Shown piece by piece: positions 4,301-48,463 of a stretch of 64,000 bases of DNA (position 1 is its first letter; each line of letters opens with the position of its first letter). The stretch is from Octopus sinensis. Lineage: Eukaryota. Below the pieces are notes generated by a model. It saw only the letters and a list, made by a program, of their open reading frames with translations. It had not been told where the DNA came from and searched no databases. The position numbers were made by a program, and so were the translations under genes. The stretch is taken from the NCBI RefSeq assembly GCF_006345805.1, contig NC_043020.1, positions 11,904,001-11,968,000 of the forward strand, given 5' to 3'.

Positions 4301-4428
4301 GCCAGGTTGAGATCTAGTTGAAATATTGTTGGTTTCCGAAATAAGAAATCGATTTTTACCAACTCCTTGGACCAAAAGAAGGCTCGTTGCATGACAACGA
4401 AGCAAAATGCAGGCGTTTTGAAGAATTT
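1319..4428 (-). CDS. Intronless GAF-GAF cyclic-nucleotide phosphodiesterase, PDE5/6/11 class, type A copy 1 (5' end lost in assembly gap)
   Basis: Uninterrupted ORF with GAF-A (LNKLDGDNFDSSDE), GAF-B and catalytic motifs YHNWQH, HDIDHRG, LENHH, ATDL, TAADL..ITKPW, EFFTQGD, MQVGFIDFV; ends KRLAICVIC (CaaX). Near-identical to 22126-25235. Confidence 0.92.
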
Positions 4429-4528
4429 NNNNNNNNNNNNNNNNNNNNNNNNNNNNNNNNNNNNNNNNNNNNNNNNNNNNNNNNNNNNNNNNNNNNNNNN
4501 NNNNNNNNNNNNNNNNNNNNNNNNNNNN
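4429..4528. other. Assembly gap (100 N)
   Basis: Run of exactly 100 N; sequence left of it matches A2 up to ~25235, sequence right of it is unrelated. Confidence 1.
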
Positions 4529-4787
4529 CATTAAAGAGCAACATTAAATCGTTGGAGGGTGTGTGTGAGAGTGTGTGTATGTGTGTGTGAGAGTGTGTGT
4601 GTGAGTGTGTGTATGTGAGAGTGTGTGTATGTATGTGTACGTGTGTGAGAGTGTGTGCATGTCTGTGTGTGAGTGTGTAATTTTAATATTTCTATTATTG
4701 AAAACAAGTGGATGTATTCCACCGTAACTAGGTAAATAGAATCTTCGAACGGAGACGGTCAGTAGCGACACCTGCAGGTCTGACTAC

Positions 4788-5671: not shown

Positions 5672-8600
5672 CTAGAATATCATGCACATTTTGCTTTTTA
5701 AAACGGTTAGTCTTTGAGGAGGGTTTGGTTTCGCAGTGATTTTCGCGCATTTCCGTTGTCGATTATCGTTGTTCAAATTTGGATTTTTTAACTTCAAGTC
5801 TGCTTGCGGTTTAAAACCTTCAGTGTTTTCATTTCCTTCCGTGCTCTTAGGTTTTTCTGAGAGATTCTCTGGGATTCTGTAAGATTCTGTGTTTCCCTGT
5901 GTTTTTCTGTAAGATTCTGTGTTTCCCTGTGTTTTTCTGTCAGATTCTGTGTTTTTCTGTGTTTTTCTGTCAGATTCTGTGTTTTCCGGTGTGTTTCTGT
6001 CAGATTCTGTGTTTTCCTGTGTTTTTCTGTCAGACGATGCTTTTGAAAAACTTCCCCTTACAGTATATTGAGAACTAATTTCCGAGATGGTTTCGTCTGA
6101 TGTCATGCTTTTGATGCTTTTGTTATATTCGGGTTCTGAAGATGATAGTTTTTGCCGTACTGGTGGTTGAAAAACACGACTTATTCTTTTGAATGGTTGG
6201 GTGGTTCATCAGGTAAGGCATTCAGAGCCTGACTTCCTCGTCGGCTTTGTGATAATTCGCTACGTTTGTTCTCAGCAACTTCATCGATCCAACTAGTTCG
6301 TCTTTGCCGGTTGATTGGAGGCAAAGGCTGAGTTGGTTGTACATGATTACTGTAAGCTTTTCTCCGTAAAGATAACTTATCTTGTCCAATGTTAGATTCT
6401 TCTAGTGTTTCTAAAGATATCACTGGTTGTTCGTGTGGCATTGTAATCGGTAAGTGCTCTGATTCTCTCAAAGAAGGCCTTTCTGTTTGAGTTATTGCCG
6501 AAAACACTTTCAGAAGTCGAGGTTCAGTTTGACTATCCGCTGTTTTTGTCTCAACATTGTTCAAAGATGGTTTGGTAGTTTTTTGTTGACATATATCTAT
6601 TGGGATTGAAATATCAGTCTGAGTAACCTTTTGCTCTTGATTAAATGTGAAAAGAGTTTGGGTCGAAACACCCGTGTCTCCTATATCTTCGACTGTCATA
6701 GCACTATCCAGCGAAATGTTATATAAAACTAATTGGAATTCTCTATCAACATCAAATTTTTCCTCACCATTTGCAATATGAGACCAATGAGCTCTGTTTT
6801 CGAGCATCCCATCGTAAAGAGGTTTTAATTCCTCATGCACCTGATGAAGAAGTTTGTAAAGTAATGTACACACAAAATCAATAAAACCAACTTGCATTTT
6901 GGGCAATTCGTATCTTTTACTGCGATCCATCATAGGCAACACAGGATATTTACATTGGGTTTCTATGTCACCTTGTTCGAAGAATTCGGCTGCGACCATA
7001 ATAGCAGTCTTTCTTTGAACCTCCCATGGCTTAGTAATAGCTGAAAGGTCACACGCAGTCATCATCATGCTAATAAGTAAATCAATGGTTTCTTGAGATG
7101 ACAACGTTTGGTCTTCGACTTCTATTTTGCGTTTGAAAATATTTCTTCTCTCAAAATATACTACGAGATCCGTGGCAATGATTGCTTTCTCGATTAATTT
7201 GAGACCCTTCTGATATTTTTCAGCTGGAACGTTTTTAAAAATATTTGTATCTTCAGTTTTTAATATCCTGATACTTTGATCTATATGATGGTTTTCCAAC
7301 ACAGACGTACTGTAAAGAGTAGCAAGAGGAGATGCCGTCTTCACTTGAAATGCATTATTATATCCTCTATGATCAAGATCATGACACAAAGCAGCCACCA
7401 ATAGGCAAATCTGCTCAAATTCTGTGAAATAATTTTGCAATTTGCCAGTAGTCAACATACAAAACATCATTTGAGTAACATTGATAGCATGACGCCAATT
7501 ATGATAGATGACAGGTCGATAGTTCTTTTTAACAGTTAGTATCCACCTATATAATAATTCTTTAGATATGTTGAGAACGGGCAATGTTTTGGCATCTAAA
7601 AATATGCGAACGACCAACAAAACAGTGTCATCCTCTGAATATATGAAGTCATTGAAATCGAATCGATAAATTTGGTAAAAACCTGAAGATAGTACCTCCA
7701 TACTTAAAAAATTATCTACAATTTCTGGATAACAAGTAATATAGTAGCTAAGTACTTTGTTTGTAAATTCTAGCTGTTCCAGCATATTTGATGCAGTTTC
7801 ATAAAGACGGCAATTATAGATAGCTAAACCGCAGAACATTGCAAATATTTCCATCATGCTGATATCATTTTGACTAAAAATATCCTTTGAATCTTTGATG
7901 TATACGATCCAACCAAGAAAATTCTTACCGGCATCTCTAATAGCTAAACAAAGCAACTGACTCTCAATCTTATATTCGAGATTTACGCTGTCAGACTCAG
8001 TAAGGTTCCCCGAAAGAAATAAATCGAAAGTATTTCCGCTGTTAATATTTTGTTCAATTGCTTTCTTTACTTTAGGTGTTATAATTTGTTCTGAGATATC
8101 TGAAGCTCCTTTCAATAAGTGAAAAACTTTGGAAGAATCAGTTGGGCAAAGGTTATCCTTTTTCGGATCAATCAAATAAATGCTGATACTCTCACACTGT
8201 AACATTTCCATGGCGAGTTTGGTAATTTCGGACATTAGTTTCGGTAGAGAATTTTGATATTTTAGTATACATCGATTCAGTCTTAGTAATAACTTGTGTT
8301 GTGTGAATTCCTCAAATGATCTTCGCAAGAAAGTATTGCTTCTTATACTAATGGCACAAAAGGACAAAAAACTCTCGCAGATCATTTGGTCTTCAGCATC
8401 AAAATAGAGATTATCTCTTTTATTTATTATTTGAGCGACAGCTAACAACTATCATCAGTGTCTAGAATTGGCATGCATAGAATGCTTTTGGTACGATGTC
8501 CAATTTTTTCGTCGACTTCACTTAAGAAACGAGGATCCTGATACACATCCTTAATATTTAAGAGATACTTATTATCAGCTACAAATCCTGCAATACCTTT

Positions 8601-9080
8601 TCCGAAGGGAATGCGTAGTGCGTTTTCTTCAGTATGAAGTGATTGTTCAAGAGTAGAGTCAGATGTAATATCAAACAGGGTCGACATTAGATATTGAACT
8701 TTTCCAACTCCTCGAACCATAAAAAGATTTGCTCTTTCACTGTGAAGTAAGATACATAAATTCTGAAGAACTTTATGACAGACAAAGTGTATATGAATCT
8801 CGGAATTAAGAACTTTCAATATTTCTTTGTACTTTTCATTTGTAGTAAGAGATTCGGCTTGGTTTCTTCGGGAAAGTTTCTTATGAAACACTATGTTTTG
8901 TAAGAAGTCTATAAAGGAATCTACTGCTTCTTCCTTTAATTTTTGATTGTATAATTCTTCCCCCAAGTCACCCAGTCCTCGCCTAGAGAGCCATGATCTA
9001 ACGAATACTGGATTCTTCGACAAGAAATCATCCACATCTTCTTCAGTAAGTCCTGCTTTCTCAGTAAATTTTGTTGCCAT
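5672..9080 (-). CDS. Intronless GAF-GAF phosphodiesterase type B copy 1 (~1136 aa after correcting two 1-bp deletions)
   Basis: ORF pieces 8442-9104, 6181-8448 and 5672-6106 join when compared with intact B2: AAA->AA near 8450 and TTT->TT near 6205. First ATG at 9080 (track start 9104 is TTG). YHNWRH, HDLDH, TACD, MQVGFIDFV intact; ends KSKMCMIF. Confidence 0.88.
5882..6031 (-). repeat. Coding 30-bp tandem repeat, 5 units (DRKTQENTES-like) in B1 tail
   Basis: Units such as GACAGAAAAACACAGGAAAACACAGAATCT, in frame. Confidence 0.9.
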
Positions 9081-9248
9081 GTTTCTTTTAAGTTTAATTT
9101 CCAAACAAGGTTCAATGATGCTTCTAAGTATTCTAGAAAACGTTTCATGAAAATTTCTGTATTTCTTGATTTTATTTTAAATCAGTAGTCTTCGCTACTT
9201 GAAATTAGAAGCAGGCAGCAGACATGCTTTCGTGGTTTGTCTTCGAAA

Positions 9249-9531: not shown

Positions 9532-11983
<2,452 letters not shown>

Positions 11984-12654: not shown

Positions 12655-15600
12655 TTATGAAATCTTACACACATACTTTTCCATAAAATCGTCCTGCCTT
12701 TTGGTTCTCTTGCTTGTAAGAACTGGTTTACTCCGTGGAATTTTCTTTAAACATTTTCTTCTTCGACCTTGATTGAGGTCTTTCACTGCAACATTAGAAA
12801 TTTTTTCTCTTTCTTCTGCACTCATTGTAAATCTTTCCATGTCTAGCGTCTGTTTAGAGATCACAGGTCTCAAAGCTCTCATCTTTTGTTCAGGCGTTTC
12901 AAATGTTACACAAGCAGCTGTCCAGCTACCTATGTCTGACGAACAACCCATCGCTTCTTGTTCTGCTCCATCGAGATTCATACTTGTAGGGAATTTATTT
13001 GTTTTTAACCATGAGTCTGAAAATGTTTTGGGTGGTTCAAGGGACATGGCTCTACTAAGAAATCCAGGTTGGCTACAGAACTCACTATCACCATTTGAAA
13101 ATTTCACTTGCGTCCCTATATTAATTTTTCGGATTCTTTTACCGATTGGCCTTACCGTTACTGCGAGAAGTTTTTCCGCATAAAAACTTTTTATGGCGTT
13201 CGTTAAAGCACGAGATTCGGAGTAAGACATTGTAGACAAATCATCATCCGTTTGAGATGTCTTTTGACGTAGTCGTTGACTTTCTTCAGCGAGAACAAAA
13301 GTAGTCTGAGTAGACGATGTTGCCATTCCTAACGCAACATTTTCAGAGTGAATCCGTGATATTTTAGGTGTTACAATTTTGTGATATTTTGCTCCTTTCA
13401 AACTCATTTCTTCATTATAAAGAGTCTCAATTTCGGAATCAATGTCAAAAAACTCGATGCCTTCAGCTATATGGGCCCAGTGATTTCGATTCTCCAATGC
13501 CCCTTCATACAGATGAGTCAGATTAGCATCCATTTCAGATAAAACTTGAAAAATCGGAACACATTGAGTATCAAAATACTTCACTTCCATTTCAGGAAAT
13601 TTGTATCTATTTTCACGATCCATGAGATCTTCGACATCTTTCTGTAAAGTTTTTTCTTGATCCCCCTGCTCGAAAAATTCAGCTGCAATCTTAACTGCAG
13701 CATTTCTTTCAAACGACCATGGCTTTGTAGTAGCTGAAAGATCACAGGCTGCCATTATAACGGTTATTAATAAATCAATGCTTTCTTGACACTGAAAACC
13801 TTTGTCGCCCTTTTTGATTTCCTCTCTAAAACTTTTAATTACTTCATTAAGATCTTTTACATCTGTGCCAAGAATCGCTTTCTCGATAAATTTAAGACCG
13901 TGCTGATAATTTTCAGCCGAGAGATTCTGGAATATATTGGTTTCGGCGGTGTTTAACATCCTGATAGCTCTATCTATATGATGGTGTTCCAAGACGGACG
14001 TATCGTATAATGTAGTGAGCGGAGATGATATCTTCACTTGAAATTTATTATTTGTCCCTCTGTGGTCAAGATCATGCAATAAAGAAGCAATAAGGGAACA
14101 AATCTGTTCAAATTCTGTGAAATAATATTGTATTCGTGAACAGGTCAAAAAATAAAACATCATTTGAAATACCAGTACACCGTGGCGCCAGTTATGGAAA
14201 ATATTTGGGCGATAATTCTTCTTTGCTGTTAAAATAAACCTGTATAAAATATCAATCGGTAAATTTAATATGGTCAAAGCATTTTTATCAAGAAACACAC
14301 GAGCACACAACGAAACAATTTCATCATCTGTAAATACAGATTCAATAAAGGCATAGGAATATAATTGATACTCTTCAGCGGATCGTGGCTCGACTTTTAA
14401 GAAAGGTTCGATAAGTTTCCGGTCGCATGTGGTATGAAATGCCAGCACATCGTTCATTACTTCTCCCTGTGCCAACATCCTAACAGAACGTTCATATATG
14501 CGACAATTATGAATACTGATTCCACAAATCAATGCAAACGTCTCCATTAGGTTGATGTCACTTTGGTCGAAAACATCTTTGGAATGTCTTTCAAATATTA
14601 TGCAACCGACGACCTCACTTGTAGCATTTGTTATTGTCATACACAGTAGCCAACGGCCGACATCACCTTCAACAGTGATTAACCTCTCTTTTGATTCACC
14701 TTGTAATCGAATTATATCGATTATATTGATACTTTTTAAATTTCGGCCAATTGGTATTATATATTTCGGATCTAACGGAACTTCCTCCACTTCTTCTTCA
14801 TCTTTTAATAACTGGAAAACGTTAGACGATATCGTCGGAGAGGCCGCATCCATTCTGTTTTCTGTCAAACAAACAGAAATCTTGCTACAGTCTAACATAT
14901 CCATGGCATGTCGAAGAATTTCTGATATAAGCTTTCGAAAATTGATTTGCTCTTTCAGAACAAATTTGACAAGTTTTAGCAATAACTTGTGGCGTTTAAA
15001 TTCCACTTGTGATATTTCTAACAACCGTTCGTTGATTATACTGATTCCGCAAAACGACAAAAAGTTCTGAAATATAATTTCATCATTCGAATCGAAATAA
15101 CGATCATGTTTCTTATTCAATGCTTGAGCTACACCTATTACGACGTCATCTCTATCCTTAATTGGTACAGATAGAATACTTTTCGTACAGAACCCCGTTG
15201 ATTTATCAATCTCATGTAAAAAACGTTCGTCTTCGTAGGCATCTTTAATGTTCAATAGACAACTGTATTCAGCTACATATCCGACAATTCCTTTCCGAAA
15301 GGAATGCGAATGGCATTTTCTTCGTTGTGAATTGTATCCTCCATAACCGAGGTGGCTGTAACGTCAAAGAGCTTGGAAACTAAGTGTAGCTTTTTAGCAG
15401 TTCCATGTAACAGAAATAGGCTCGCTCTCTCACAATCGAGGATGATACAAGCATTTTGAAGAATTTTATGACACTGTTTGTCGACATTGACTTCGAAAAC
15501 AGTGTCTTTTACAAACTCTCTGTATATTTCATTCTCTGTCACTACTGAACTATACCCTCTTGATTTTGATTTCACCTCCTGTAATACTGTATCACTTGTA

Positions 15601-15758
15601 GTTGCACTATAACCGGTCTCTCCCGGTACTTTCAACGTGCATTTAAGGCTTTGCCTTTTGACGTCCACTGTAAAATGCCGAGATTGCCATTTGCGAACGA
15701 AATCTGGATTATTCTGTAAGAAATTTTCAACCTCATCTTGCTGTAAATCATCCATCAT
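12655..15758 (-). CDS. Intronless GAF-GAF phosphodiesterase type C (~1034 aa after correcting one 1-bp deletion), atypical active site
   Basis: 15273-15758 and 12655-15255 join at IPFG-KGIVG (GGAAAAGGA read as GGAAAGGA near 15297). ATG at 15758 is preceded by an in-frame TAA. Metal ligands HNWRH, HDLDH, AACD retained; invariant Q replaced (MEVKYFD); ends KYVCKIS. Confidence 0.88.
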
Positions 15759-21453: not shown

Positions 21454-24400
21454 GTATTATGTATGTATGTATGTATGTATGTATGTATGTATGTATATTT
21501 TTATGTATGTATGTATGTATGTATGTATGTATACAGGGTGAGAGTGAATGTTAGGTTGTGTGTGTGGTCTGTGTTTCTGTCTGTCGGCAGTAAAATACAT
21601 TGTTACCAGCTCGTAGCTTCGAGATTTCGAGAGTGTGATTATGTTTTTTGAATGACATTGTCGGGTAGGTGTGAGAGGCCAGATATGGTCGGTTTAGATT
21701 TAAACATGAAACACAGCAGAATATTTGAGTTTGATTTGCTGGTTTAAATGCCAAAGTTTGAAACCAGAAACTTAAATATTTGCTAATCAATTTATTTAAT
21801 TTAATTACTCTCTCAACGGCATATTTTAATATCTTTTGTGAGGGCGATGAGGTGGCACAATCGTTAGTATCGGAATATATGCCTCACCATATTTGTCCCT
21901 CGTCTATACCTTCTGAAGTCAAATCCCGCCGAGGTTAACTTTACGTTACATTTCTTCGGAGTACGAGTCAAGGAATGGATTCAATGATTTCGACTAATCC
22001 CGCATCCTCTCCTCAAAAATGTCGGCTTTGTGCATAAAGAAGAAAACATTTTAATGCCTTTGTTATTTCATTTTTATTTTCGTTACTAGAACACCAGTTG
22101 TTCCTCCGGCCCATATAATGGTAGTCTAACAAACCACACAAATAACCAATCTTTTACGCCTTTGAGAATTCTTTGGAACAGCTTTCACACATTTTCGTTT
22201 TCGAAACTCCATATTCTGTGTCGTATCTTTTTTCATTATTGAACTCGATCTTTTAAACACACTGTCCTTTCGATCTCTCAGTATAGAAAGTGACTTTCGA
22301 GCCACAGGTATTCTACTTTTTGTACTATCACTACCCTCGTATGCATCCGTCCAAGACAGTCTGTTCTTTTTTGGCGTAGTTATCTGTACCTCTTTACTCT
22401 TCTTACGAACATTTTCGTTCTCCTTAATGGGAGATTTCACCGATATTTCGGATTTCAAAGAAGACTTCTTCGGAATGTTTTCAAACAAAACTTCATCTCT
22501 TTGAGAAATTTCCCCAATCGAAAACCGTATGGTAGACGAACTTCTGTTGAATATATAATCACTGGAACGTGTTTGTGTGCTTTCCCGTCGTACTGGGTTC
22601 GGTGGTAAAATAACACGCGATGATCTTTTTATAGACAAAGGTTTTTCTAAACAGAGTGCATTTCTAAATGATTTTCCTTTTTCCTGCTCTAATTCCCGGC
22701 GTCTTTCGTAAAGAAGCTCATCGAAACAACTTGATCGTCTTGCTGTATAAGGCGACCTGTATAATGACGACTTGGAACGTGATGAAACTATAGTTTCTGA
22801 TCCCGAGTAGTTCCCAGATTTTGTTAAAGTGGACGGTTGTCGTCTGAATACGTGTGGTTGTGGTTCATCGGGTGAGGCTTCACCTGTACGTGTAGCAGGT
22901 ACATAAGTCTGAACAGATACTTCGCTTACAGTTGGGGATCGTTCATCGGTTTGACAATTCTTTGTTACTCTAGTAATCATCTCAGTTTCCGGTGAAACAG
23001 GTATTGTTAGATCATCCACAGTGACTAATTCTTCAATAGGATAAGAAAGTATGGTTTGGATGGTTTGTTGCTCTAGCACCACATTTAAATATGTTAGAAC
23101 TGTCTGTGTGGCTACATTTACTTGTAACATCGGAGTAGTCGTACTCGATATCGGTACTCCTGAGTAAAACGTCTTTAAAGCTAATTCATACTCTTTCTTA
23201 ATATCAAATATTTCATCACCATTTGCAATACCAGCCCAGTGAGCTCTGTTGTCGAGCATCCCATGATATAAAGGCTCCAATTCTTCATGCAGTTCTGACA
23301 AAGTTTTATAAAGCAGTGTACTCACAAAATCAATAAAACCAACTTGCATTTGTGGTATTTCGCGTATACAATTGCGATCCATTAACGGCAACAGAGGAAT
23401 ATCATAAGCTCTTTCCATGTCTCCTTGTGTAAAGAATTCCTCAGCCATTAACATGACTGAGAATTTTTGAAAATCCCATGGCTTGGTAATAGCTGTAAGA
23501 TCAGCTGCAGTCATTATCATACTAGTTAATAATTCAACGCTTTCTCGAGACTCAAAAGTTTTGTTACCGTCTTCGATGTGTTTTCTAAAAGTGTTTCTTT
23601 TCAAAAAATAATCTACAAGGTCTGTAGCGAGGATTGCTTTCTCGATAAATTTGAGAGCCTTCTTATATTTTTCAGCTGAAACGTTTTTTAAAATATTTGT
23701 ATCTTCATTTTGCAATATCATGATACTTCGATTTATATGATGGTTTTCCAACACAGACGTATTGTAGAGAGTAGCAAGAGGCGATGCTGTATTCACTTGG
23801 AATGCATTATTGGTTCCTCTGTGATCAATGTCATGAAACAAGCAAGCTATTAGCAGACATATTAGTTCAAATTCTTTGAAATATACTTGTAATCTACCGG
23901 TGGTCAACATACAAAACATTGCTTGAGTAACATTGACAGCATGCTGCCAATTATGGTAGGTAAGAGGACGATAGTTTTTTTTCACAGTTAGTATCCATCT
24001 ATACAAAGTAAACTTGGATATTTTCAATGAATTTAGAGCGTTCATTTCTATAAAGATAAGAGCAGTCAATATAACCTGTTCGTCTTCTGAGTATAAATAA
24101 CTAATAAAATTGTAAGAGTAAAGTTTATAGTGACTTGTTGTGCGAATGTCTTGATGTTGCATGTCATAAGCTTCTTCTTCTTCGCAAGTCGTGTGAAACT
24201 GAAGCAATTCGTATGCGAAATCTTGGCTGGATGTTATTTTATTGCAACTTTTGTACAAATGGTCGTTATAAATCGCCAGTCCGCAGAAAATGGCAAATGT
24301 CTCCAACATATTAATGTCATTTTCACTAAAGGTATTAATCGTCTTCCTGAGAAACATCATATAACCAATTACACTATCGCGATCACCGTGTATTGTCACG

Positions 24401-25235
24401 CAAATTATCCAATTTAGTATATCACCATCCAATGTGATTTTGGTTTTCCATTTGGTTCTATCATGTAAATTAGTCACGCTAACTACATTCACCATGCTAG
24501 CACTATTCATATTTCGTTCAATAAATGATATGAACATTGGGTCTATAGGAGTATTTTTTACTTTAGTGTCTCCCTTCAAAAGTTGTAAAACGTTCGCTGA
24601 CTCGGTCAGTTGACGTGCATCGTCTATATCATCACTTAAATAGATGCTGATATTATCACAGTCCAGCATTTTGATGGCGTATTGAAGAATTTCAGATACA
24701 AGTCTCTGGAAATCCTCCCCCGTTTTCAAAAAACACCGACCGAGTTTCAATAACATTTGATGCCGTATTGTTTCTCCTTGGGCAGCTTTAAAGAACTGAT
24801 CATTGTTGAGATTCAGAGCACAAATTTTCGAGAAACATTCGAATAAGTTTTCATCACTAGAATCGAAATTATCTCCATCCAATTTATTCAATGCTTTAGC
24901 TACTCCTATCACACGATCGTTTTTATCGAAAATTGGTAGCGAAAGAATCGATCTAATTTGACAGTTAGTCTCTCTCATATTTTCCGTAAGGCGTGAATCA
25001 CGCCACGCTTCTTTAATATTTACTAAACATTCGTTTTCCGCTACGAAACCAACAATTCCTTCGCCAAATGGTAGATGAACCGTGTCTTCTTCTGTATTAT
25101 CTATTTCGCCAGGTTGAGATCTAGTTGAAATATTGTTGGTTTCCGAAATAAGAAATCGATTTTTACCAACTCCTTGGACCAAAAGAAGGCTCGTTGCATG
25201 ACAACGAAGCAAAATGCAGGCGTTTTGAAGAATTT
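21440..25235. repeat. Direct segmental duplication of PDE type A (partner ~670-4428)
   Basis: Near-identical from the (TATG)n/CAGGGTGAGAGTG flank to the gap edge. Confidence 0.92.
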
Positions 25236-25534
25236 TTTTAGTAACTCTCGTTGAATTAATGTCTGACTGAACCACTTTGAGTGTATCTCTGAACAAATTC
25301 ATCTTACTAACAGGTAACTCTGGTTCCTCAACCAAATTCTCAAGATATTCAGTTGGATCTTGTTTGGGAGACAGTTTAACCCCAAAATTTTAGGGCAGCT
25401 TTTGATAAAATCTTATGTTTCGAAAAATCGGGTGCTATTTCTTCCATGCCGTGTTCTGAAAGCCATTTATCAACGAATTCTGGGTTGTCATGAAGGAAAT
25501 CTCTTATGTCTTCTTCTGTCAGACCTGTAGACAT
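22126..25534 (-). CDS. Intronless GAF-GAF phosphodiesterase type A copy 2 (~1135 aa including N-terminus hidden by a 1-bp insertion)
   Basis: The track ORF starts at TTG 25335, but ATG 25534 encodes MSTGLTEEDIRDFLHDNPEFVDKWL (family N-terminal motif) and joins after removing one base in AAAATTTTGGGG (25380-25391). Catalytic motifs intact; ends KRLVICVVC. Confidence 0.9.
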
Positions 25535-33468: not shown

Positions 33469-36400
33469 ATGGTGGACCCTATTTGCGCAGACGACGTGGA
33501 AAAGTTTTTAGAAGAAAATCCAGAATTCACTAAAAACTGGATTTCTAAAAACAATGCTAATACTTCTGAAGAGAAAGTTGTTGTGGTTCCGTCTTTAAGA
33601 CATTCATTTATAGATTGCGTTAAAATGATTATTTCTCGAAACAGCAGCATTGGTGTAAACAAGAAAACGGTATTAACCGCAAAGGACACTTACAGAGAAA
33701 TCATGAAGGAATTGGTTTCCGAGCTTAATGAAGATAAATTGTGTTATGCAATTCTTCAGAACACGTGTATTTTGCTCCAGTGTAGTAGCGCGAGTATTTA
33801 TTTGGCTCGAGGTACCGGAAAGACGCGTTATCTTTTATCTAAATACGTCGACGTGACCGCTACTTCTGACAGAAATGAAACCCTTCGTTCAGAACCCGAT
33901 ACCATTTGTATACCATTCGGTGAAGGAATCTTGGGTTATGTAGCTGAAAGTAAGCGTTCTTTGAACATCAAAGATGTCACTCGGTCTCATTATTCTTTAA
34001 GTGATGACAAATCGATTGGACTTCAAGTCCAAAGTATTTTTTGTATGCCGATTCTAAATAAAAACGATAATGTAATGGGTGTTGTTAATGTCCAGAACAG
34101 CAAAGAAAATACTAATTTTTCTTTAGAAGATGAAACATTATTTGAGAACTTATTATCCGTTTGTGGAATCAGTATAGATAATGCTCATTTGCTTCAAGTT
34201 TGTCTTGAAGAATTTAAACGCCACCAGTTATTACTAAAGCTCACGAACTGCATTTTGAAGGAACAGAACAATCTACCAAAGCTTATTTCTCAAATTTTGC
34301 ACCATGCCATGGCGCTGATTGAGAGTAGTAATATCAGCATCTATTTAACTGACAGTAACAAAGAAACAGTTGGTCCAAATATGAATTCTAAAGTGTTTCA
34401 ATTATTGAGAGAAGAGAAAGAAGCAAAAGAAGTGACAATAGATAGGAAATTTATAAAACCTGTTGAAAATAATTTGAAGAGTGAAAATGTATTCGATGTT
34501 TTCAATTTAAAATGTTCTTCTGAAATCTCGCTTCCAAATCTCAAAAACAGCGAAAGGTGGTTACTTGTTATGCCAATAAAAGATTCCACGGGAAACGCTA
34601 TTGGTTCTATTATGTTTGTCAGGGATTCGGTGGACAATTTCAGTGAAAATGATATCAATATGATGAAAGTATTTACAACATATTGCGGTTTGAGTATCTT
34701 CAACTGTCGTTTGTACGAGAGTTCAGCTAAGTCGGTGTCTCGGGCGAAAATAATCAATGATATTATTGCCTACCACGTGACGTGTGATCAAAAAACAATC
34801 GATCGTTTTCTATCAATGGAAATGAAATCTTCAGAACACTATCAAATATACAATTTTCACTTCGATGATTCATTATACACAGATGGTGATACTGTTTTAA
34901 TATGTGCCCGGTTGCTTTTAAATCTTGATGTTGTAAATGTTCTGAATATATCTATGGCTTATTTGTATAGGTTTATTGTAACAGTGAAAGACAACTATCG
35001 TCCACTTACCTACCATAACTGGCGCCATGTTTTAAACGTTACACAATCAATGTTCTGTATGTTGACTACAGGTAAATTACAGACTTACTACACGAAATTC
35101 CAAATGATTTGTTTATTAATTGCTTGTTTGCTTCATGATCTTGAGCACAGAGGGCAGAATAATTCGTTCCAAGTGAGAGTAGCATCTTCGCTTGCTACAT
35201 TGTACAGTACGTCTTTCCTAGAGCACCGTCATATAAGTCGAAGCATGATGCTATTGAACAAATCCGGAACTGATATCTTTAAAAATCTTCCGGTTGAAAA
35301 GTATCGAGAGGGTTTCAGACTAATAGAGAAAGCAATCCTTGCCACGGATCTCAGGAACCATTTTGAGAATAGGAGCATTTTTAAACATGAAATACAAAGT
35401 GATCACAGAACGTTTGATTCTCTTGAAAGTATTGATTTACTAATTGGCATGATGATGACTGCAGCTGATCTGTCGGTTGCGACTAAGCCATGGGAAATTC
35501 AAAGAAAGACCGCCATCAAAGTCATATCTGAATACTTCGATCAAGGAGAGCCGGGTAAAGCTTTAAAATCTTATGTGTTTCCTTTGGTGGATCGCGAGAA
35601 AAAATATGAAATAACTAAGGCACAAGTTGATTTTATTGATTTTGTGTGTATGCCGATTTATAAACTTTTGGTAAAGTTAGAAACGCGTTTGAGACCATTA
35701 TATGACGGGTGCATCGCAAACGGAACGCGCTGGCGTCTTATTGCTGCTGATAAAGAAAAGTTTAATATCGATGAAGAATTAAATTTTGTTTCACATCAGA
35801 GATTAAGAGTTAACCAACCAAAACAGTACCAAGAATTCCGAAGTAGCTCAATGGATATTCAAAATCGAAATAACAAGATTTTAGAACCAATATTAGATGA
35901 ATTTCGATCACCTATAGCATTAAATTTAATTACAGAACATAATCCCTCCCTATGGTGTCATTCACAACCATTGTTAGTGCCTAAACTAAACAAGCTTACT
36001 AAGTTAAAATCACCAATTTCTGCTTGTTCATGGCAAGAAAACATTGTGAAGTTAACTATGGCTGTGCCTCATAAAAAAGTTGAAATAAATGAGAAATCTT
36101 GTCAGACAGACATGCAAATCGTTAAATTACACCCCGGAAACACCGTACAAATATATAATCCCAAAGGTAAACTTACTTCAGAAGGTCCGATGAAAGTTAG
36201 TCTTCCAGTTAAAACAACTTATTCAACCACAGTTCATTCAGATATCAATGAATCTACGACTGGCAAACGCTCGAATAGCATTGCTAAATCTATGCAACGT
36301 CGAAATTATATCCCGACATTGGCTCTTTCACCGAATTCACTGGGAACACCAATAGGCGTGAAAACACTCATAAAACATACTAATTCGACTCGCCTTTTTG

Positions 36401-36630
36401 ATAATGTTAAACACGTCGTCACCGATGATATTTGTAGAGTTTCTGAAAAACTAAACGGGAAAATACGGCGAAATCTGACTGTAAATGAATATAATGAGGT
36501 TCCTACTGTAGAATATGACTTTACACCAAATATTAATCAGTTTCGAAGGCGAAAATGTTTGAAGAAAATTCCCATTAATATGAAGGACGAGCAAGTTATT
36601 TTGAAGAGTTATTTGTGTGTGATTTCATAA
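33469..36630 (+). CDS. Intronless GAF-GAF phosphodiesterase type D (1053 aa, intact ORF)
   Basis: MVDPICADDVEKFLEENPEF; YHNWRH, HDLEH, ATDL, TAADL..TKPW, AQVDFIDFV; ends RRRKCLKKIP...KSYLCVIS. Confidence 0.95.
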   Translation: MVDPICADDVEKFLEENPEFTKNWISKNNANTSEEKVVVVPSLRHSFIDCVKMIISRNSSIGVNKKTVLTAKDTYREIMKELVSELNEDKLCYAILQNTCILLQCSSASIYLARGTGKTRYLLSKYVDVTATSDRNETLRSEPDTICIPFGEGILGYVAESKRSLNIKDVTRSHYSLSDDKSIGLQVQSIFCMPILNKNDNVMGVVNVQNSKENTNFSLEDETLFENLLSVCGISIDNAHLLQVCLEEFKRHQLLLKLTNCILKEQNNLPKLISQILHHAMALIESSNISIYLTDSNKETVGPNMNSKVFQLLREEKEAKEVTIDRKFIKPVENNLKSENVFDVFNLKCSSEISLPNLKNSERWLLVMPIKDSTGNAIGSIMFVRDSVDNFSENDINMMKVFTTYCGLSIFNCRLYESSAKSVSRAKIINDIIAYHVTCDQKTIDRFLSMEMKSSEHYQIYNFHFDDSLYTDGDTVLICARLLLNLDVVNVLNISMAYLYRFIVTVKDNYRPLTYHNWRHVLNVTQSMFCMLTTGKLQTYYTKFQMICLLIACLLHDLEHRGQNNSFQVRVASSLATLYSTSFLEHRHISRSMMLLNKSGTDIFKNLPVEKYREGFRLIEKAILATDLRNHFENRSIFKHEIQSDHRTFDSLESIDLLIGMMMTAADLSVATKPWEIQRKTAIKVISEYFDQGEPGKALKSYVFPLVDREKKYEITKAQVDFIDFVCMPIYKLLVKLETRLRPLYDGCIANGTRWRLIAADKEKFNIDEELNFVSHQRLRVNQPKQYQEFRSSSMDIQNRNNKILEPILDEFRSPIALNLITEHNPSLWCHSQPLLVPKLNKLTKLKSPISACSWQENIVKLTMAVPHKKVEINEKSCQTDMQIVKLHPGNTVQIYNPKGKLTSEGPMKVSLPVKTTYSTTVHSDINESTTGKRSNSIAKSMQRRNYIPTLALSPNSLGTPIGVKTLIKHTNSTRLFDNVKHVVTDDICRVSEKLNGKIRRNLTVNEYNEVPTVEYDFTPNINQFRRRKCLKKIPINMKDEQVILKSYLCVIS

Positions 36631-44992: not shown

Positions 44993-47900
44993 ATGGAAAC
45001 AAAATTTACTGAGAAAGCAGGACTTACTGAAGAAGATGTGGATGATTTCTTGTCGAAGAATCCAGAATTCGTTAGATCATGGCTCTCTAGGCGAGGACTG
45101 GGTGACTTGGGGGAAGATTTATACAATCAAAAATTAAAGGAAGAAGCAGTAGATTCCTTTATAGGTTTTGTACAAAACATTTTCATTCATAAGAAACTTT
45201 CCCGAAGATACCAAGCCGAATCTCTTACTACAAATGAAAAGTACAAAGAAATATTGAAAGTTCTTAATTCCGAGATTCATATACACTTTGTCTGTCATAA
45301 AGTTCTTCAGAATTTATGTATCTTACTTCACAGTGAAAGAGCAAATCTTTTTATGGTTCGAGGAGTTGGAAAAGTTCAATATCTAATGTCGACCCTGTTT
45401 GATATTACACCTGACTCTACTCTTGAACAATCACTTCATACTGAAGAAAACGCACTACGCATTCCCTTCGGAAAAGGTATTTCAGGATTTGTAGCTCAAA
45501 ATAGATGTCTATTAAATATTAAGGATGTGTATCAGGATCCTCGTTTCTTAAGTGAAGTCGACGAAAAAATTGGACATCGTACCAAAAGCATTCTATGCAT
45601 GCCAATTCTAGACAATGATGATAGTTTGTTAGCTGTCGCTCAAATAATAAATAAAAGAGATAATCTCTATTTTGATGCTGAAGACCAAATGATCTGCGAG
45701 AGTTTTTTGTCCTTTTGTGCCATTAGTATAAGAAGCAATACTTTCTTGCGAAGATCATTTGAGGAATTCACACAACACAAGTTATTACTAAGACTGAATC
45801 GATGTATACTAAAATATCAAAATTCTCTACCGAAACTAATGTCCGAAATTACCAAACTCGCCATGGAAATGTTACAGTGTGAGAGTATCAGCATTTATTT
45901 GATTGATCCGAAAAAGGATAACCTTTGCCCAACTGATTCTTCCAAAGTTTTTCACTTATTGAAAGGAGCTTCAGATATCTCAGAACAAATTATAACACCT
46001 AAAGTAAAGAAAGCAATTGAACAAAATATTAACAGCGGAAATACTTTCGATTTATTTCTTTCGGGGAACCTTACTGAGTCTGACAGCGTAAATCTCGAAT
46101 ATAAGATTGAGAGTCAGTTGCTTTGTTTAGCTATTAGAGATGCCGGTAAGAATTTTCTTGGTTGGATCGTATACATCAAAGATTCAAGGGATATTTTTAG
46201 TCAAAATGATATCAGCATGATGGAAATATTTGCAATGTTCTGCGGTTTAGCTATCTATAATTGCCGTCTTTATGAAACTGCATCAAATATGCTGGAACAG
46301 CTAGAATTTACAAACAAAGTACTTAGCTACTATATTACTTGTTATCCAGAAATTGTAGATAATTTTTTAAGTATGGAGGTACTATCTTCAGGTTTTTACC
46401 AAATTTATCGATTCGATTTCAATGACTTCATATATTCAGAGGATGACACTGTTTTGTTGGTCGTTCGCATATTTTTAGATGCCAAAACATTGCCCGTTCT
46501 CAACATATCTAAAGAATTATTATATAGGTGGATACTAACTGTTAAAAAGAACTATCGACCTGTCATCTATCATAATTGGCGTCATGCTATCAATGTTACT
46601 CAAATGATGTTTTGTATGTTGACTACTGGCAAATTGCAAAATTATTTCACAGAATTTGAGCAGATTTGCCTATTGGTGGCTGCTTTGTGTCATGATCTTG
46701 ATCATAGAGGATATAATAATGCATTTCAAGTGAAGACGGCATCTCCTCTTGCTACTCTTTACAGTACCTCTGTGTTGGAAAATCATCATATAGATCGAAG
46801 TATCAGGATATTAAAAACTGAAGATACAAATATTTTTAAAAACGTTCCAGCTGAAAAATATCAGAAGGGTCTCAAATTAATCGAGAAAGCAATCATTGCT
46901 ACGGATCTCGTAGTATATTTTGAGAAAAAAAATATTTTCAAACGCAAAATAGAAGTCGAAGACCAAACGTTGTCATCTCAAGAAACCATTGATTTACTTA
47001 TTAGCATGATGATGACTGCGTGTGACCTTTCAGCTATTACTAAGCCATGGGAGGTTCAAAGAAAGACTGCTATTATGGTCGCAGCCGAATTCTTCGAACA
47101 AGGTGACATAGAAACCAAATGTAAATATTTTGTGTTGCCTATGATGGATCGCAGTAAAAGATACGAATTGCCCAAAATGCAAGTTGGTTTTATTGATTTT
47201 GTGTGTACATTACTTTACAAACTTCTTCATCAGGTGCATGAGGAATTAAAACCTCTTTACGATGGGATGCTCGAAAACAGAGCTCATTGGTCTCATATTG
47301 CAAATGGTGAGGAAGAATTTGATGTTGATAGAGAGTTCCAATTAGTTTTACATAACATTTCGCTGGATAGTGCTATGACAGTCGGAGATATAGGAGACAC
47401 GGGTGTTTCGACCCAAACTCTTTTCACATTTAATCAAGAGCAAAAGGTTACTCAGACTGATATTTCAATCCCAATAGATATATGTCAACAAAAAACTACC
47501 AAACCATCTTTGAACAATGTTGAGACAAAAACAGCGGATAGTCAAACTGAACCTCGACTTCTGAAAGTGTCTTCGGCAATAACTCAAACAGAAAGGCCTT
47601 CTTTGAGAGAATCAGAGCACTTACCGATTACAATGCCACACGAACAACCAGTGATATCTTTAGAAACACTAGAAGAATCTAACATTGGACAAGATAAGTT
47701 ATCTTTACGGAGAAAAGCTTACAGTAATCATGCACAACCAACTCAGCCTTTGCCTCCAATCAACCGGCAAAGACGAACTAGTTGGATCGATGAAGTTGCT
47801 GAGAACAAACGTAGCGAATTATCACAAAGCCGACGAGGAAGTCAGGCTCTGAATGCCTTACCTGATGAAACCACCCAACCATTCAAAAGAATAAGTCGTG

Positions 47901-48463
47901 TTTTTCAACCACCAGTACGGCAAAAACTATCATCTTCAGAACCCGAATATAACAAAAGCATCAAAAGCATGACATCAGACGAAACCATCTCGGAAATTAG
48001 TTCTCAATATACTGTAAGGGGAAGTTTTTCAAAAGCATCGTTTGACAGAAAAACACAGGAAAACACAGAATCTGACAGAAACACACAGGAAAACCCAGAA
48101 TCTGACAGAAAAACACAGAAAAACACAGAATCTGACAGAAAAACACAGGGAAACACAGAATCTGACAGAAAAACACAGGGAAACAGAGAATCTTACAGAA
48201 AAACACAGGAAAACACAGAATCTGACAGAAAAACACAGGGAAACACAGAATCTTACAGAATCCCAGAGAATCTCTCAGAAAAACCTAAGAGCACGGAAGG
48301 AAATGAAAACACTGAAGGTTTTAAACCGCAAGCAGACTTGAAGTTAAAAAATCCAAATTTGAACAACGATAATCGACAACGGAAATGCGCGAAAATCACT
48401 GCGAAACCAAACCCTCCTCAAAGACTAACCGTTTTAAAAAGCAAAATGTGCATGATATTCTAG
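44993..48463 (+). CDS. Intronless GAF-GAF phosphodiesterase type B copy 2 (1156 aa, intact ORF)
   Basis: ATG at 44993 (track start 44969 is TTG); GLTEEDVDDFLSKNPEF, LFDI, DPRF, YHNWRH, HDLDH, TACD, LPKMQVGFIDFVC; ends KSKMCMIF. Confidence 0.96.
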   Translation: METKFTEKAGLTEEDVDDFLSKNPEFVRSWLSRRGLGDLGEDLYNQKLKEEAVDSFIGFVQNIFIHKKLSRRYQAESLTTNEKYKEILKVLNSEIHIHFVCHKVLQNLCILLHSERANLFMVRGVGKVQYLMSTLFDITPDSTLEQSLHTEENALRIPFGKGISGFVAQNRCLLNIKDVYQDPRFLSEVDEKIGHRTKSILCMPILDNDDSLLAVAQIINKRDNLYFDAEDQMICESFLSFCAISIRSNTFLRRSFEEFTQHKLLLRLNRCILKYQNSLPKLMSEITKLAMEMLQCESISIYLIDPKKDNLCPTDSSKVFHLLKGASDISEQIITPKVKKAIEQNINSGNTFDLFLSGNLTESDSVNLEYKIESQLLCLAIRDAGKNFLGWIVYIKDSRDIFSQNDISMMEIFAMFCGLAIYNCRLYETASNMLEQLEFTNKVLSYYITCYPEIVDNFLSMEVLSSGFYQIYRFDFNDFIYSEDDTVLLVVRIFLDAKTLPVLNISKELLYRWILTVKKNYRPVIYHNWRHAINVTQMMFCMLTTGKLQNYFTEFEQICLLVAALCHDLDHRGYNNAFQVKTASPLATLYSTSVLENHHIDRSIRILKTEDTNIFKNVPAEKYQKGLKLIEKAIIATDLVVYFEKKNIFKRKIEVEDQTLSSQETIDLLISMMMTACDLSAITKPWEVQRKTAIMVAAEFFEQGDIETKCKYFVLPMMDRSKRYELPKMQVGFIDFVCTLLYKLLHQVHEELKPLYDGMLENRAHWSHIANGEEEFDVDREFQLVLHNISLDSAMTVGDIGDTGVSTQTLFTFNQEQKVTQTDISIPIDICQQKTTKPSLNNVETKTADSQTEPRLLKVSSAITQTERPSLRESEHLPITMPHEQPVISLETLEESNIGQDKLSLRRKAYSNHAQPTQPLPPINRQRRTSWIDEVAENKRSELSQSRRGSQALNALPDETTQPFKRISRVFQPPVRQKLSSSEPEYNKSIKSMTSDETISEISSQYTVRGSFSKASFDRKTQENTESDRNTQENPESDRKTQKNTESDRKTQGNTESDRKTQGNRESYRKTQENTESDRKTQGNTESYRIPENLSEKPKSTEGNENTEGFKPQADLKLKNPNLNNDNRQRKCAKITAKPNPPQRLTVLKSKMCMIF
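48044..48253 (+). repeat. Coding 30-bp tandem repeat, 7 units, in B2 tail
   Basis: DRKTQENTES-like x7 versus x5 in B1. Confidence 0.92.

What the first reader, a model, noticed from the sequence alone, without database searches (positions are those of the whole stretch)
47400..47595. Clusters of TQT-type dynein light chain (LC8) motifs in the PDE tails
Seen: right after the catalytic domain every type carries (S/T/C)-Q-T motifs in a low-complexity tail. B: GVSTQTL, QKVTQTDI, ADSQTEP, AITQTER. A: NVATQTV, KNCQTDE, VSVQTY. C: SSTQTT, KTSQTDD, NIGTQVK. D: EKSCQTDM. The surrounding tails are otherwise unalignable between types. Established: (K/R)xTQT and G(I/T)QV are the LC8/DYNLL binding consensus, multivalent arrays occur in disordered LC8 clients, and LC8 is also an axonemal component. 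I know of no PDE5/6/11 with such an array. Inference: the enzymes are dimer-stabilised or targeted by LC8, possibly in flagella.
Basis: partly seen in the sequence, partly recalled or inferred. Interest (0 to 1): 0.8.

Follow-up and report, generated by a model that had tools for sequence, protein, structure and literature searches.

The report
Conserved TQT-like motif arrays, octopus PDEs
A cluster of intronless octopus cGMP-phosphodiesterase genes carries, just after the catalytic domain, a conserved and lineage-specific array of short "x-Gln-Thr" motifs that look like weak-to-moderate docking sites for the dimeric hub protein LC8, which would zip the enzyme's two disordered, membrane-anchored tails together; binding has not been tested.

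Summary
The window is Octopus sinensis and holds six intronless GAF-GAF-PDE genes (PDE5/6/11-like, CaaX-terminated). All four B1 motifs lie at 47399-47593, and the A, C and D motifs are also as quoted.

The motifs exceed chance. TQT occurs 6 times against 0.53 expected. In 88 non-octopod homologues the tails show no enrichment. The proximal tails are only 16-28% identical between paralog types and between Octopus and Argonauta. There, Q and T of the xQT slots are almost the only conserved columns, and slot order and spacing (13-16, about 30-35, 13-15 residues) are kept. Position -1 varies only among T, I, V, S and C, which matches the LC8 anchor rule. AlphaFold2 predicts disorder.

LC8 binding remains a prediction. 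A PSSM rebuilt from the published LC8 training set puts most sites low among strong binders and level with anchor-containing non-binders, with about one good site per protein. The most conserved slot has S or C at -1. Conserved residues outside the 8-mer are unexplained.

Best reading (about 0.5): multivalent LC8 sites bridging the two tails of the PDE dimer. Flagellar targeting has no support here.

The parts
44993..48463 (+). Gene B1: intronless GAF-GAF-PDEase_I phosphodiesterase, 1156 aa from the ATG, ending in CaaX (CMIF)
   Evidence: ORF. Pfam GAF and PDEase_I, E=2e-82. PDE5 and PDE6 structures are the best PDB matches. The exact protein is found in GCA_006345805.1 CM016882.1.
47399..47422 (+). 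B1 slot m1: TGVSTQTL (TQT anchor, hydrophobic +2)
   Evidence: PSSM score 7.9. Conserved in O. bimaculoides as KGISTQTI.
47438..47461 (+). B1 slot m3: EQKVTQTD (K at -3, TQT, D at +2), followed by ISIP of the conserved [DN][IL].IP block
   Evidence: No violation of the published positional rules. Orthologous sites: KQMDTQTD, GQKDIQTD, GDENVQTN.
47528..47551 (+). B1 slot m2: KTADSQTE, a member of the [SC]-Q-T-[DE] slot present in every paralog type
47570..47593 (+). B1 slot m4: SSAITQTE, the best-scoring B1 site
   Evidence: PSSM 13.1, the 38th percentile of strong binders. Orthologous sites: SSALTQTE, CSAMVQTD, QSIGIQTY, SEVSVQTY.
47771..47794 (+). B1 conserved tail module RRTSWIDE (RRxS basophilic-kinase-type consensus followed by a predicted helix)
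   Evidence: AF2 helix at model residues 470-487. Related modules occur in A and in P0009, P0011 and P0021.
48449..48460 (+). B1 C-terminal CaaX box CMIF
22126..25335 (-). Gene A1: intronless GAF-GAF-PDE, CaaX CVVC
22903..23121 (-). A1 motif array: VNVATQTV (23098-23121), EQQTIQTI (23050-23073), VTKNCQTD (22945-22968), SEVSVQTY (22903-22926). Q-to-Q spacing 16/35/14.
   Evidence: The Argonauta A-like copy keeps KNKGIQTE, EQQTSQTI and VTKECQTS with spacing 16/34.
1319..4531 (-). Gene A2: near-identical copy of A1 with an N run in its 5' part, CaaX CVIC
2096..2314 (-). A2 motif array, the same four motifs as A1
6181..9104 (-). Gene B2: copy of B1 split over two reading frames, with a truncated tail and no CaaX. 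Probably a pseudogene or an assembly error.
6481..6675 (-). B2 motif array: TGVSTQTL, EQKVTQTD, KTADSQTE, FSAITQTE
12655..15758 (-). Gene C: GAF-PDE split over two frames in this assembly, CaaX CKIS
13102..13323 (-). C motif array: ATSSTQTT (13300-13323), RQKTSQTD (13246-13269), INIGTQVK (13102-13125)
   Evidence: The first and third 8-mers are identical in O. bimaculoides P0024. The middle one differs at one flanking residue (RQKISQTD). All anchors are kept.
33469..36630 (+). Gene D: intronless GAF-GAF-PDE, CaaX CVIS
36088..36156 (+). D motifs: NEKSCQTD (36088-36111) and PGNTVQIY (36133-36156), 15 residues apart. D is the type poorest in motifs.
   Evidence: Conserved in O. bimaculoides P0008.

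Best explanation
The proximal C-terminal tails of an octopod-specific family of intronless PDE5/6/11-type phosphodiesterases carry 2-4 short linear motifs with the core [T/I/V/S/C]-Q-T. The proteins are built as GAF-A, GAF-B, catalytic domain, a roughly 250-390-residue disordered tail, a polybasic stretch and a CaaX prenylation box.

The motifs keep a conserved order and spacing inside sequence that otherwise diverges fast. The most likely reader is the dimeric hub protein LC8 (DYNLL).

Proposed mechanism. Each motif would add as a beta-strand to one groove of an LC8 dimer. Enzymes of this type are parallel homodimers held by their GAF domains, so each LC8 dimer would take the same motif from both tails. 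The result would be a short ladder of two closely stacked pairs of LC8 dimers. The ladder would zip and stiffen about 60-100 residues between the catalytic heads and the membrane-anchored C-termini.

Individually the sites are weak to moderate. Occupancy would depend on the bivalency of the dimer and on multivalency.

Shown here: existence, enrichment, lineage restriction, positional conservation, anchor degeneracy, predicted disorder.

For: 1. Enrichment. TQT is 6 observed against 0.53 expected, and [STC]QT is 10 against 1.29.

2. Lineage specificity.
- 88 non-octopod homologues with tails of at least 60 aa (13,023 residues) have 16 anchors, against 21.6 expected from composition, and none score at or above 11.6 on the PSSM.
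- Seven octopod types (2,034 residues) have 25 anchors against 8.1 expected, and six sites score at or above 11.6.

3. Deep conservation.
- Tails are 16-28% identical. In a MAFFT alignment of eight types, only seven columns reach 6 of 8 identity, and five of those are the Q or T of xQT.
- Shuffled tails give 1.56 such columns on average, and 0 of 150 shuffles reach seven.
- The majority consensus of the proximal tail reads only TQT, D..IP and T..SQT.
- Two Argonauta hians paralogs keep the slots.

4. Conserved spacing. A 16/35/14; Argonauta A-like 16/34; B 13/30/14; B2 31/14; Argonauta B-like 29/13; D 15. This lies within the range seen between validated neighbouring LC8 sites in the training table, which is 11-36 residues.

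5. [quoted passage not shown] Over 27 slot instances:
- Position 0 is Q in 27 of 27.
- Position +1 is T 24, I 2, V 1.
- Position -1 is T 7, S 6, C 5, I 5, V 4 and nothing else. That residue set makes up 36% of tail composition.
- K is the commonest residue at -3 (8 of 27), and D or E stands at +2 in 11 of 27.
- G precedes I at -1 in KGIQTE, KGIQTI and IGIQTY, as in the GIQV class.

6. Some sites are close to textbook: KNKGIQTE 14.5, TSICTQT[NT] 14.5-15.7, SSAITQTE 13.1, KSKGIQTI 12.7.

7. Flank scores are far above those of random anchors in homologues (median 0.8 against -6.6, p=4e-7).

8. Disorder. With a 79-sequence alignment AF2 gives the catalytic domain pLDDT 93-99. The motif region gets pLDDT 27-41 with no secondary structure and no docking.

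9. Published context. LC8 binds dimeric partners much more tightly, and weak motifs are rescued by neighbouring motifs (PMC6607443).
Against: 1. No binding data exist, and no LC8-peptide complex could be modelled with these tools.

2. My re-implemented PSSM (leave-one-out AUROC 0.82) places most sites at the 0-38th percentile of strong binders. Their flanks cannot be distinguished from ITC-negative anchor peptides (p=0.48) and score lower than binders (p=3e-5).

3. The single slot shared by all types, [SC]QT[DE], never has T, I or V at -1. Cys at -1 has no precedent among the 79 binders.

4. Slot m1 has a hydrophobic +2, which is disfavoured.

5. Conserved residues lie outside the LC8 8-mer: QTILSYP, TQT.[LF].[FL] and [DN][IL].IP. 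The last is kept in A-types even though they lack the QT there.

6. Between O. sinensis and O. bimaculoides dS is only 0.10-0.24, so conservation at that depth says little. Omega in the proximal tail is about 1.

7. Type D has only one plausible site.
Confidence: 0.5

Rival explanations
1. The xQT slots are real functional short linear motifs, but their reader is not LC8. One option is an unknown partner. The other is an intramolecular or inter-subunit contact, in which beta-strand-like segments of the tail dock on the catalytic or GAF domains as a regulatory element.
For: - The universally conserved slot has S or C at -1, not T, I or V.
- Conservation extends beyond the 8-residue LC8 footprint: EQQT.QTILSYP, TQT.[LF].[FL], and [DN][IL].IP, which is kept without QT in A-types.
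- Sequence scores overlap those of non-binders.
Against: - No other reader of a [TIVS]-Q-T core is known to me (own knowledge).
- AF2 shows no docking of the segment on the catalytic domain, with pLDDT 27-41. The alignment is shallow in that region, so this is weak evidence.
- The T/I/V/S spectrum at -1, K at -3, D/E at +2 and the G-I pairing are all LC8-specific traits.
Confidence: 0.3
2. The motifs are phosphorylation sites. Either they form an SQ/TQ cluster domain for ATM/ATR-type kinases, or acidophilic-kinase sites on the +1 Thr (QT[DE]).
For: - B1 has four [ST]Q within 60 residues, which meets the usual count criterion for an SQ/TQ cluster (the criterion is from own knowledge).
- Many sites are followed by D or E.
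- The tail also has RRxS sites.
Against: - Position -1 is I, V or C, which cannot be phosphorylated, in 14 of 27 slot instances, while Q is invariant.
- A kinase acting on the +1 Thr would not explain an invariant Gln before it.
- The proteins are prenylated cytoplasmic enzymes, not DNA-damage factors.
- ASCIZ is a precedent in which such a 'cluster' is a run of LC8 sites.
Confidence: 0.07
3. There is no function. The motifs are chance products of S/T/Q-rich composition, or neutral relics in fast-evolving and possibly decaying retrogene copies.
For: - Omega is 0.62-1.04 along the B gene.
- Two of the six copies in the window are broken.
- Paralogs share ancestry, so raw motif counts are inflated.
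Against: - Shuffle tests.
- The control with 88 other tails of similar type.
- The alignment-shuffle control.
- Retention of slots, spacing and the restricted -1 alphabet between Octopus and Argonauta and across paralog types, at 16-28% tail identity.
- ORFs of more than 1000 codons stay open in four species, with all catalytic invariants kept.
Confidence: 0.08

Closest known systems
ASCIZ/ATMIN (multivalent LC8 client)
   Same: A run of TQT-type motifs of unequal strength in a disordered region that was first read as an SQ/TQ cluster. Weak motifs bind thanks to their neighbours (training table; PMC6607443; PMC5963919 and PMC10046861 abstracts).
   Different: ASCIZ is a transcription factor with 7-11 validated sites, almost all with T at -1. 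Here an enzyme tail carries 2-4 unvalidated sites, many with S, C, I or V at -1.
RSP3 radial-spoke protein and dynein intermediate chain (axonemal or dynein LC8 clients)
   Same: Dimeric proteins whose disordered segment holds several LC8 sites about 20-25 residues apart. RSP3 includes IQT and TQI anchors like those seen here (PMC3392930).
   Different: Those are structural axonemal or motor subunits. No evidence here places the octopus PDEs in an axoneme.
KANK1 L2 linker (preprint PMC12803091)
   Same: A cortex- or membrane-anchored protein whose long disordered linker is proposed to be turned into a rod by multivalent LC8 binding (abstract). This is the closest analogue of the 'stiff stalk between membrane anchor and head' idea.
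   Different: KANK1 is a scaffold, not an enzyme, and is anchored through protein contacts instead of a prenyl group plus polybasic stretch. It has experimental support.
Neuronal NO synthase (PIN/LC8 site, GIQVD class)
   Same: A dimeric enzyme of the NO-cGMP pathway with an LC8 site (Nos1 entry). GIQT and GTQV sites occur in types C and E and in the Argonauta copies.
   Different: nNOS has a single N-terminal site and acts on the synthesis side of the pathway, not on degradation.
Vertebrate PDE6, PDE5 and insect Pde6-type cGMP phosphodiesterases
   Same: GAF-A/GAF-B/catalytic architecture, all catalytic invariants, and a C-terminal CaaX in many members.
   Different: Their C-terminal tails show no xQT enrichment: 16 anchors against 21.6 expected in 13,023 residues. 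The octopod genes are also intronless, tandemly clustered and fast-evolving.

Membership tests
LC8/DYNLL-binding short linear motif (TQT class), multivalent client | Anchor triplet: Gln at 0 with a mid-sized H-bonding or hydrophobic residue at -1 and +1 | tested here: met
   27 of 27 slot instances have Q. Position +1 is T, I or V. Position -1 is T, I, V or S in 22 instances and C in 5. The rule is quoted from PMC6607443. Cys at -1 has no precedent in the training set.
LC8/DYNLL-binding short linear motif (TQT class), multivalent client | Flank preferences: large or basic residue at -3, polar at -4, D/E/P at +2, no internal Pro, overall PSSM score in the binder range | tested here: inconclusive
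   The PSSM was rebuilt from the 79 binders and 32 non-binders, with AUROC 0.82. Sites score -9.5 to 15.7. About one per protein scores 12 or more, and most score 6-10, which is around the 10th percentile of binders and the median of non-binders. Flank median is 0.8, against 3.6 for binders and -1.8 for non-binders. This is not the original LC8Pred, so its published thresholds do not apply.
LC8/DYNLL-binding short linear motif (TQT class), multivalent client | Motif lies in an intrinsically disordered, accessible region | tested here: met
   AF2 with 79 sequences gives the catalytic domain pLDDT 93-99 and B1 residues about 809-937 pLDDT 27-41 with no secondary structure. The tails are more hydrophilic than the bodies. 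Caveat: alignment depth is low in the tail.
LC8/DYNLL-binding short linear motif (TQT class), multivalent client | Motif conserved relative to its disordered surroundings | tested here: met
LC8/DYNLL-binding short linear motif (TQT class), multivalent client | Client is dimeric or oligomeric, so that one LC8 dimer takes two identical strands | not tested
   Inferred from homology. Tandem GAF domains are present.
LC8/DYNLL-binding short linear motif (TQT class), multivalent client | Direct, Gln-dependent physical binding to LC8 | not testable with these tools
   No complex prediction or experiment was possible.
PDE5/6/11-type GAF phosphodiesterase | Tandem GAF domains followed by a class I PDE catalytic domain with the metal-binding His/Asp invariants and the invariant Gln | tested here: met
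   Pfam GAF and PDEase_I. PDB best hits are PDE5 at 2e-130 and PDE6. The invariant H..H, HD..H, E..H, D and MQVGFID columns are kept.
Prenylated (PDE6-like) phosphodiesterase | C-terminal CaaX box | tested here: met
   CVVC/CVIC, CMIF, CKIS and CVIS, each preceded by R(R/K)(R/K)KC. Prenylation itself was not tested.
SQ/TQ cluster domain (PIKK substrate region) | The phospho-acceptor Ser or Thr before Gln is the conserved element | tested here: not met
   The position before Gln is I, V or C in 14 of 27 instances, while Gln and the following Thr are conserved.

The most novel reading that the evidence does not exclude
An LC8 ladder on the paired tails acts as a stiff spacer of defined length between a prenyl/polybasic membrane anchor and the two cGMP-hydrolysing heads. 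On this reading it was invented once in octopods, in a fast-evolving and possibly male-germline retrogene family. This would be the first cyclic-nucleotide phosphodiesterase whose geometry at the membrane is set by LC8.

Alternatively, the invariant [SC]-Q-T-[DE] slot and the flanking conserved blocks define a new motif-reader pair unrelated to LC8.
Probability: 0.2. Interest if true: 0.65.

Novelty: new member of a known kind. Interest (0 to 1): 0.5.

Why it matters
If the sites bind LC8, these would be the first phosphodiesterases among LC8 clients. They would also be a clean natural example of a multivalent LC8 array arising de novo in one animal lineage, on an enzyme that is already dimeric and membrane-anchored. 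That is a useful test case for the idea that LC8 turns disordered linkers into rods of set length.

It would also give a handle on an unstudied, octopod-specific expansion of intronless cGMP-PDE genes. Their high dN/dS and one unmapped testis-biased transcript hint at a reproductive role.

If the sites do not bind LC8, the strictly conserved x-Q-T slots still mark an unknown functional motif.

Tried and rejected
- A tail-only profile search of the 5.8-billion-protein set returned only P0024. The full-length profile search missed several known family members, because the word prefilter is lossy. More octopod orthologs therefore could not be gathered that way. A second Argonauta paralog was found by reading the flank of P0016.
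- Exact-protein look-ups meant to find transcript contigs returned only genome records, so there is no expression evidence.
- The supplements of the O. sinensis gonad paper hold neither the gene id nor the PDE name, so the testis-biased PDE cannot be mapped to this cluster.
- The sources of relatives P0009, P0021 and P0011 could not be identified.
- The first AF2 run, with an 8-sequence alignment, was uninformative at mean pLDDT 40.7 even in the catalytic domain. It was repeated with 79 sequences.
- A combined binder/non-binder score ranked non-anchor peptides highly. It was dropped in favour of the binder-only PSSM restricted to anchor-containing 8-mers.
- DNA-repeat origin of the motifs was rejected, because the codons differ and TRF finds only the downstream 30-nt repeat.
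- The SQ/TQ kinase-site reading was rejected on the -1 residue spectrum.
- O. sinensis versus O. bimaculoides conservation was down-weighted after dS proved to be only 0.10-0.24.
Full report
**What the window is**

The 64-kb window carries six long single-exon ORFs:
- A1 22126-25335(-)
- A2 1319-4531(-)
- B1 44969-48463(+)
- B2 6181-9104(-)
- C 12655-15758(-)
- D 33469-36630(+)

Each encodes two GAF domains followed by a class I cyclic-nucleotide phosphodiesterase domain (Pfam PDEase_I E=1e-67 to 2e-82). The best solved relatives are PDE5 (2e-130) and PDE6. Each intact copy ends in a polybasic stretch and a CaaX box.

The B1 protein, read from its ATG at 44993, occurs exactly in GCA_006345805.1, CM016882.1. 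From memory this is the Octopus sinensis assembly. That fits the 95% identity to O. vulgaris P0001 and the O. sinensis partial hit P0004. The O. bimaculoides B ortholog is also a single uninterrupted ORF, and so are two paralogs in Argonauta hians. Non-LTR retrotransposon ORFs (endonuclease, RVT_1, zf-RVT) lie between the genes.

**The observation**

The four B1 motifs are at 47399-47422 (TGVSTQTL), 47438-47461 (EQKVTQTD), 47528-47551 (KTADSQTE) and 47570-47593 (SSAITQTE). This matches the finding's 47400-47595. All motifs quoted for A, C and D are present, and a few more were missed. Apart from one match in C, every [TSCVI]Q[TV] match in the four proteins lies in the tail.

**Is it more than chance?**

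Composition-preserving shuffles of the four tails gave the following:

| Pattern | Observed | Expected |
|---|---|---|
| TQT | 6 | 0.53 |
| [STC]QT | 10 | 1.29 |
| K..QTD | 4 | 0.02 |

None of 20,000 shuffles reached the observed total for any of these three patterns.

The paralogs are related, so I added controls that do not assume independence.

1. Other tails of the same enzyme family.
   - 88 non-octopod PDE5/6/11-type homologues with tails of at least 60 residues (13,023 residues) hold 16 anchors against 21.6 expected from composition. They hold four TQT and no site with PSSM score at or above 11.6.
   - Seven octopod types (2,034 residues) hold 25 anchors against 8.1 expected, and six such high-scoring sites.
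2. An alignment-shuffle control. In a MAFFT alignment of the proximal tails of eight types, only seven columns reach 6 of 8 identity, and five of them are the Q or T of xQT. Shuffled tails give 1.56 such columns on average, and none of 150 shuffles reaches seven.

The array is therefore real, specific to octopods in the available data, and the main conserved feature of the proximal tail.

**Anatomy**

Alignment of the tails and the Argonauta copies resolve recurrent slots:
- m0: [AG][TI]QT, in A-types.
- m1: [STC][TIS]QT followed by a hydrophobic pattern, in A, B, C and E.
- m3: [TIV]QT[DN], fused to a [DN][IL].IP block, in B-types.
- m2: [SC]QT[DE], in every type including D and both Argonauta copies.
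- m4: [TVI]Q[TI], in A, B and D types.
- m5: G[IT]Q[TV], in C and E.

Slot correspondence for C and E is ambiguous, because the two alignments differ.

Q-to-Q spacing is conserved:

| Type | Spacing (residues) |
|---|---|
| A | 16/35/14 |
| Argonauta A-like | 16/34 |
| B, both Octopus species | 13/30/14 |
| B2 | 31/14 |
| Argonauta B-like | 29/13 |
| D | 15 |

Residue use over 27 slot instances:

| Position | Residues |
|---|---|
| 0 | Q 27 |
| +1 | T 24, I 2, V 1 |
| -1 | T 7, S 6, C 5, I 5, V 4 |
| -3 | K in 8 of 27 (commonest residue) |
| +2 | D or E in 11 of 27 |

The -1 residue set makes up 36% of tail composition.

With a 79-sequence alignment AF2 models the catalytic domain at pLDDT 93-99. 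It leaves B1 residues about 809-937 at pLDDT 27-41 with no secondary structure and no docking. A helix follows at the RRTSWIDEVAENK module. An earlier run with eight sequences was uninformative.

The published rules (PMC6607443) ask for:
- Gln at 0, flanked by mid-sized H-bonding or hydrophobic residues.
- A large or basic residue at -3.
- A polar residue at -4.
- D, E or P at +2.
- No bulky aromatic at -2.

The anchors comply, and several sites are near-textbook (KNKGIQTE, TSICTQTN, SSAITQTE, KSKGIQTI, EQKVTQTD).

I rebuilt a PSSM from the paper's 79 binders and 32 anchor-containing non-binders. Its leave-one-out AUROC is 0.82. It is not the original LC8Pred.
- About one site per protein scores 12-15.7, which is the 30th-80th percentile of strong binders.
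- Most sites score 6-10, roughly the 10th percentile of binders and the median of non-binders.
- Flank-only scores have a median of 0.8. This lies between strong binders (3.6) and ITC non-binders (-1.8). It is far above random anchors in homologues (-6.6, p=4e-7). It is not separable from non-binders (p=0.48).

The training set was restricted to Kd below 25 µM. The authors state that weak motifs bind when the partner is dimeric or when sites are clustered. Both conditions would hold here.

Points against:
- The one slot shared by all types has S or C at -1 and never T. Cys there has no precedent.
- m1 has a hydrophobic +2.
- Conserved residues lie outside the 8-mer. These include a [DN][IL].IP block that A-types keep without the QT.

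**Evolutionary rate**

Between the O. sinensis and O. bimaculoides B orthologs dS is only 0.10-0.24. Omega is 0.65 in the GAF region, 0.62 in the catalytic domain, 0.82 in the tail and 1.04 in the proximal tail.
- The perfect anchor conservation between those two species (12 of 12) therefore carries little weight. The argument rests on the deep comparisons.
- These are fast-evolving genes. Even so, ORFs of more than 1000 codons remain open in four species with all catalytic invariants, so at least some copies are functional.
- B2 and C are split across reading frames in this assembly.

**Mechanism proposed**

The best reading, at about 0.5, is a multivalent array of weak-to-moderate LC8 sites. 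The enzyme should be a parallel GAF-mediated dimer. This is inferred from homology and was not tested. Each LC8 dimer would bind the same slot on both tails, giving two closely stacked pairs of LC8 dimers. They would zip and stiffen the segment between the catalytic heads and the prenyl/polybasic membrane anchor. This resembles the rod formation proposed for other multivalent clients (abstracts).

**Rival explanations**

- A different, unknown reader or an intramolecular contact (0.3).
- Phosphorylation sites (0.07). This is disfavoured because position -1 cannot be phosphorylated in 14 of 27 instances.
- No function (0.08). The controls above contradict this.

The 'flagella' inference has no support here. 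The only related item is a testis-biased 'cGMP-specific PDE-like' transcript in O. sinensis gonads, at 13.93 against 0 FPKM (PMC11202624). I could not map it to this cluster.

**Comparison and novelty**

Full-text searches found no paper linking a phosphodiesterase to LC8 or to TQT motifs. The only co-mentions concern unrelated radial-spoke proteomics. Relatives of unknown source (P0009, P0011, P0021) share the distal tail modules but have E/K-rich sequence where the octopod proteins have xQT slots.

I rate this a probable new member of a known kind, namely multivalent LC8 clients. It sits on an unusual carrier: a prenylated, dimeric cGMP phosphodiesterase from an octopod-specific retrogene-like cluster. 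It stays unproven until binding is measured.

Noticed in passing
window 1319-48463 (six genes); L002 3001-6276; L008 1320-4523 and 10001-13018: PDE5/6/11-type genes normally have many introns. Here six copies sit as single uninterrupted ORFs in 48 kb, including two near-identical pairs (A1/A2, B1/B2). Orthologs in O. bimaculoides and Argonauta hians are also intronless. This looks like a retrogene-derived, tandemly amplified, octopod-specific family.
   Followed up: partly
window 6181-9104 (-) and 12655-15758 (-): B2 is split over two reading frames, and its tail ends early (…ALNALPDEPPNHSKE*) with no CaaX. C is also split over two frames (15273-15758 and 12655-15255). Each is either a pseudogene or an assembly indel error.
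   Followed up: no
window 48043-48260 (+): A 30-nt tandem repeat of 7.3 copies lies inside the B1 tail and encodes the decapeptide ESDRKTQxNT. O. vulgaris P0001 has five copies and O. bimaculoides P0002 has none, so copy number changes quickly. The TQ here is followed by E, G or K and is not an LC8-type anchor.
   Followed up: partly
window 9495-11000 (+), 28437-29447 (+), 56036-59123 (+): Non-LTR retrotransposon ORFs (RVT_1; zf-RVT; endonuclease plus RVT_1) lie in GC-richer islands between the AT-rich PDE genes.
   Followed up: partly
window 47771-47794 (B1), 22717-22740 (A1); also P0009, P0011, P0021: A conserved distal tail module RR[ST]S..(D/E)E(L/I/V) is followed by a predicted helix. Further on there is a PPNP(V/I)R-like element and then R(R/K)(R/K)KC + CaaX. 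These modules are shared with intronless relatives of unknown source that lack the xQT array. They suggest basophilic-kinase (PKA/PKG-type) regulation and K-Ras-like membrane anchoring of the tail.
   Followed up: no
window 44993-48460 versus L002 3001-6273: dN/dS between the O. sinensis and O. bimaculoides B orthologs is high along the whole gene, at 0.62-0.65 in the GAF and catalytic domains and about 1 in the proximal tail. This is unusual for a signalling enzyme and typical of reproductive or recently duplicated genes.
   Followed up: partly
window 23023-23049 (A1, approx.), 47456-47473 (B1): A conserved block [DN]-[IL]-x-I-P (DLTIP, DLIIP, DISIP, DITIP, NISIP) directly follows the B-type m3 motif. 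A-types keep the block although they lack the QT there. It is an unexplained second conserved element of the proximal tail.
   Followed up: no
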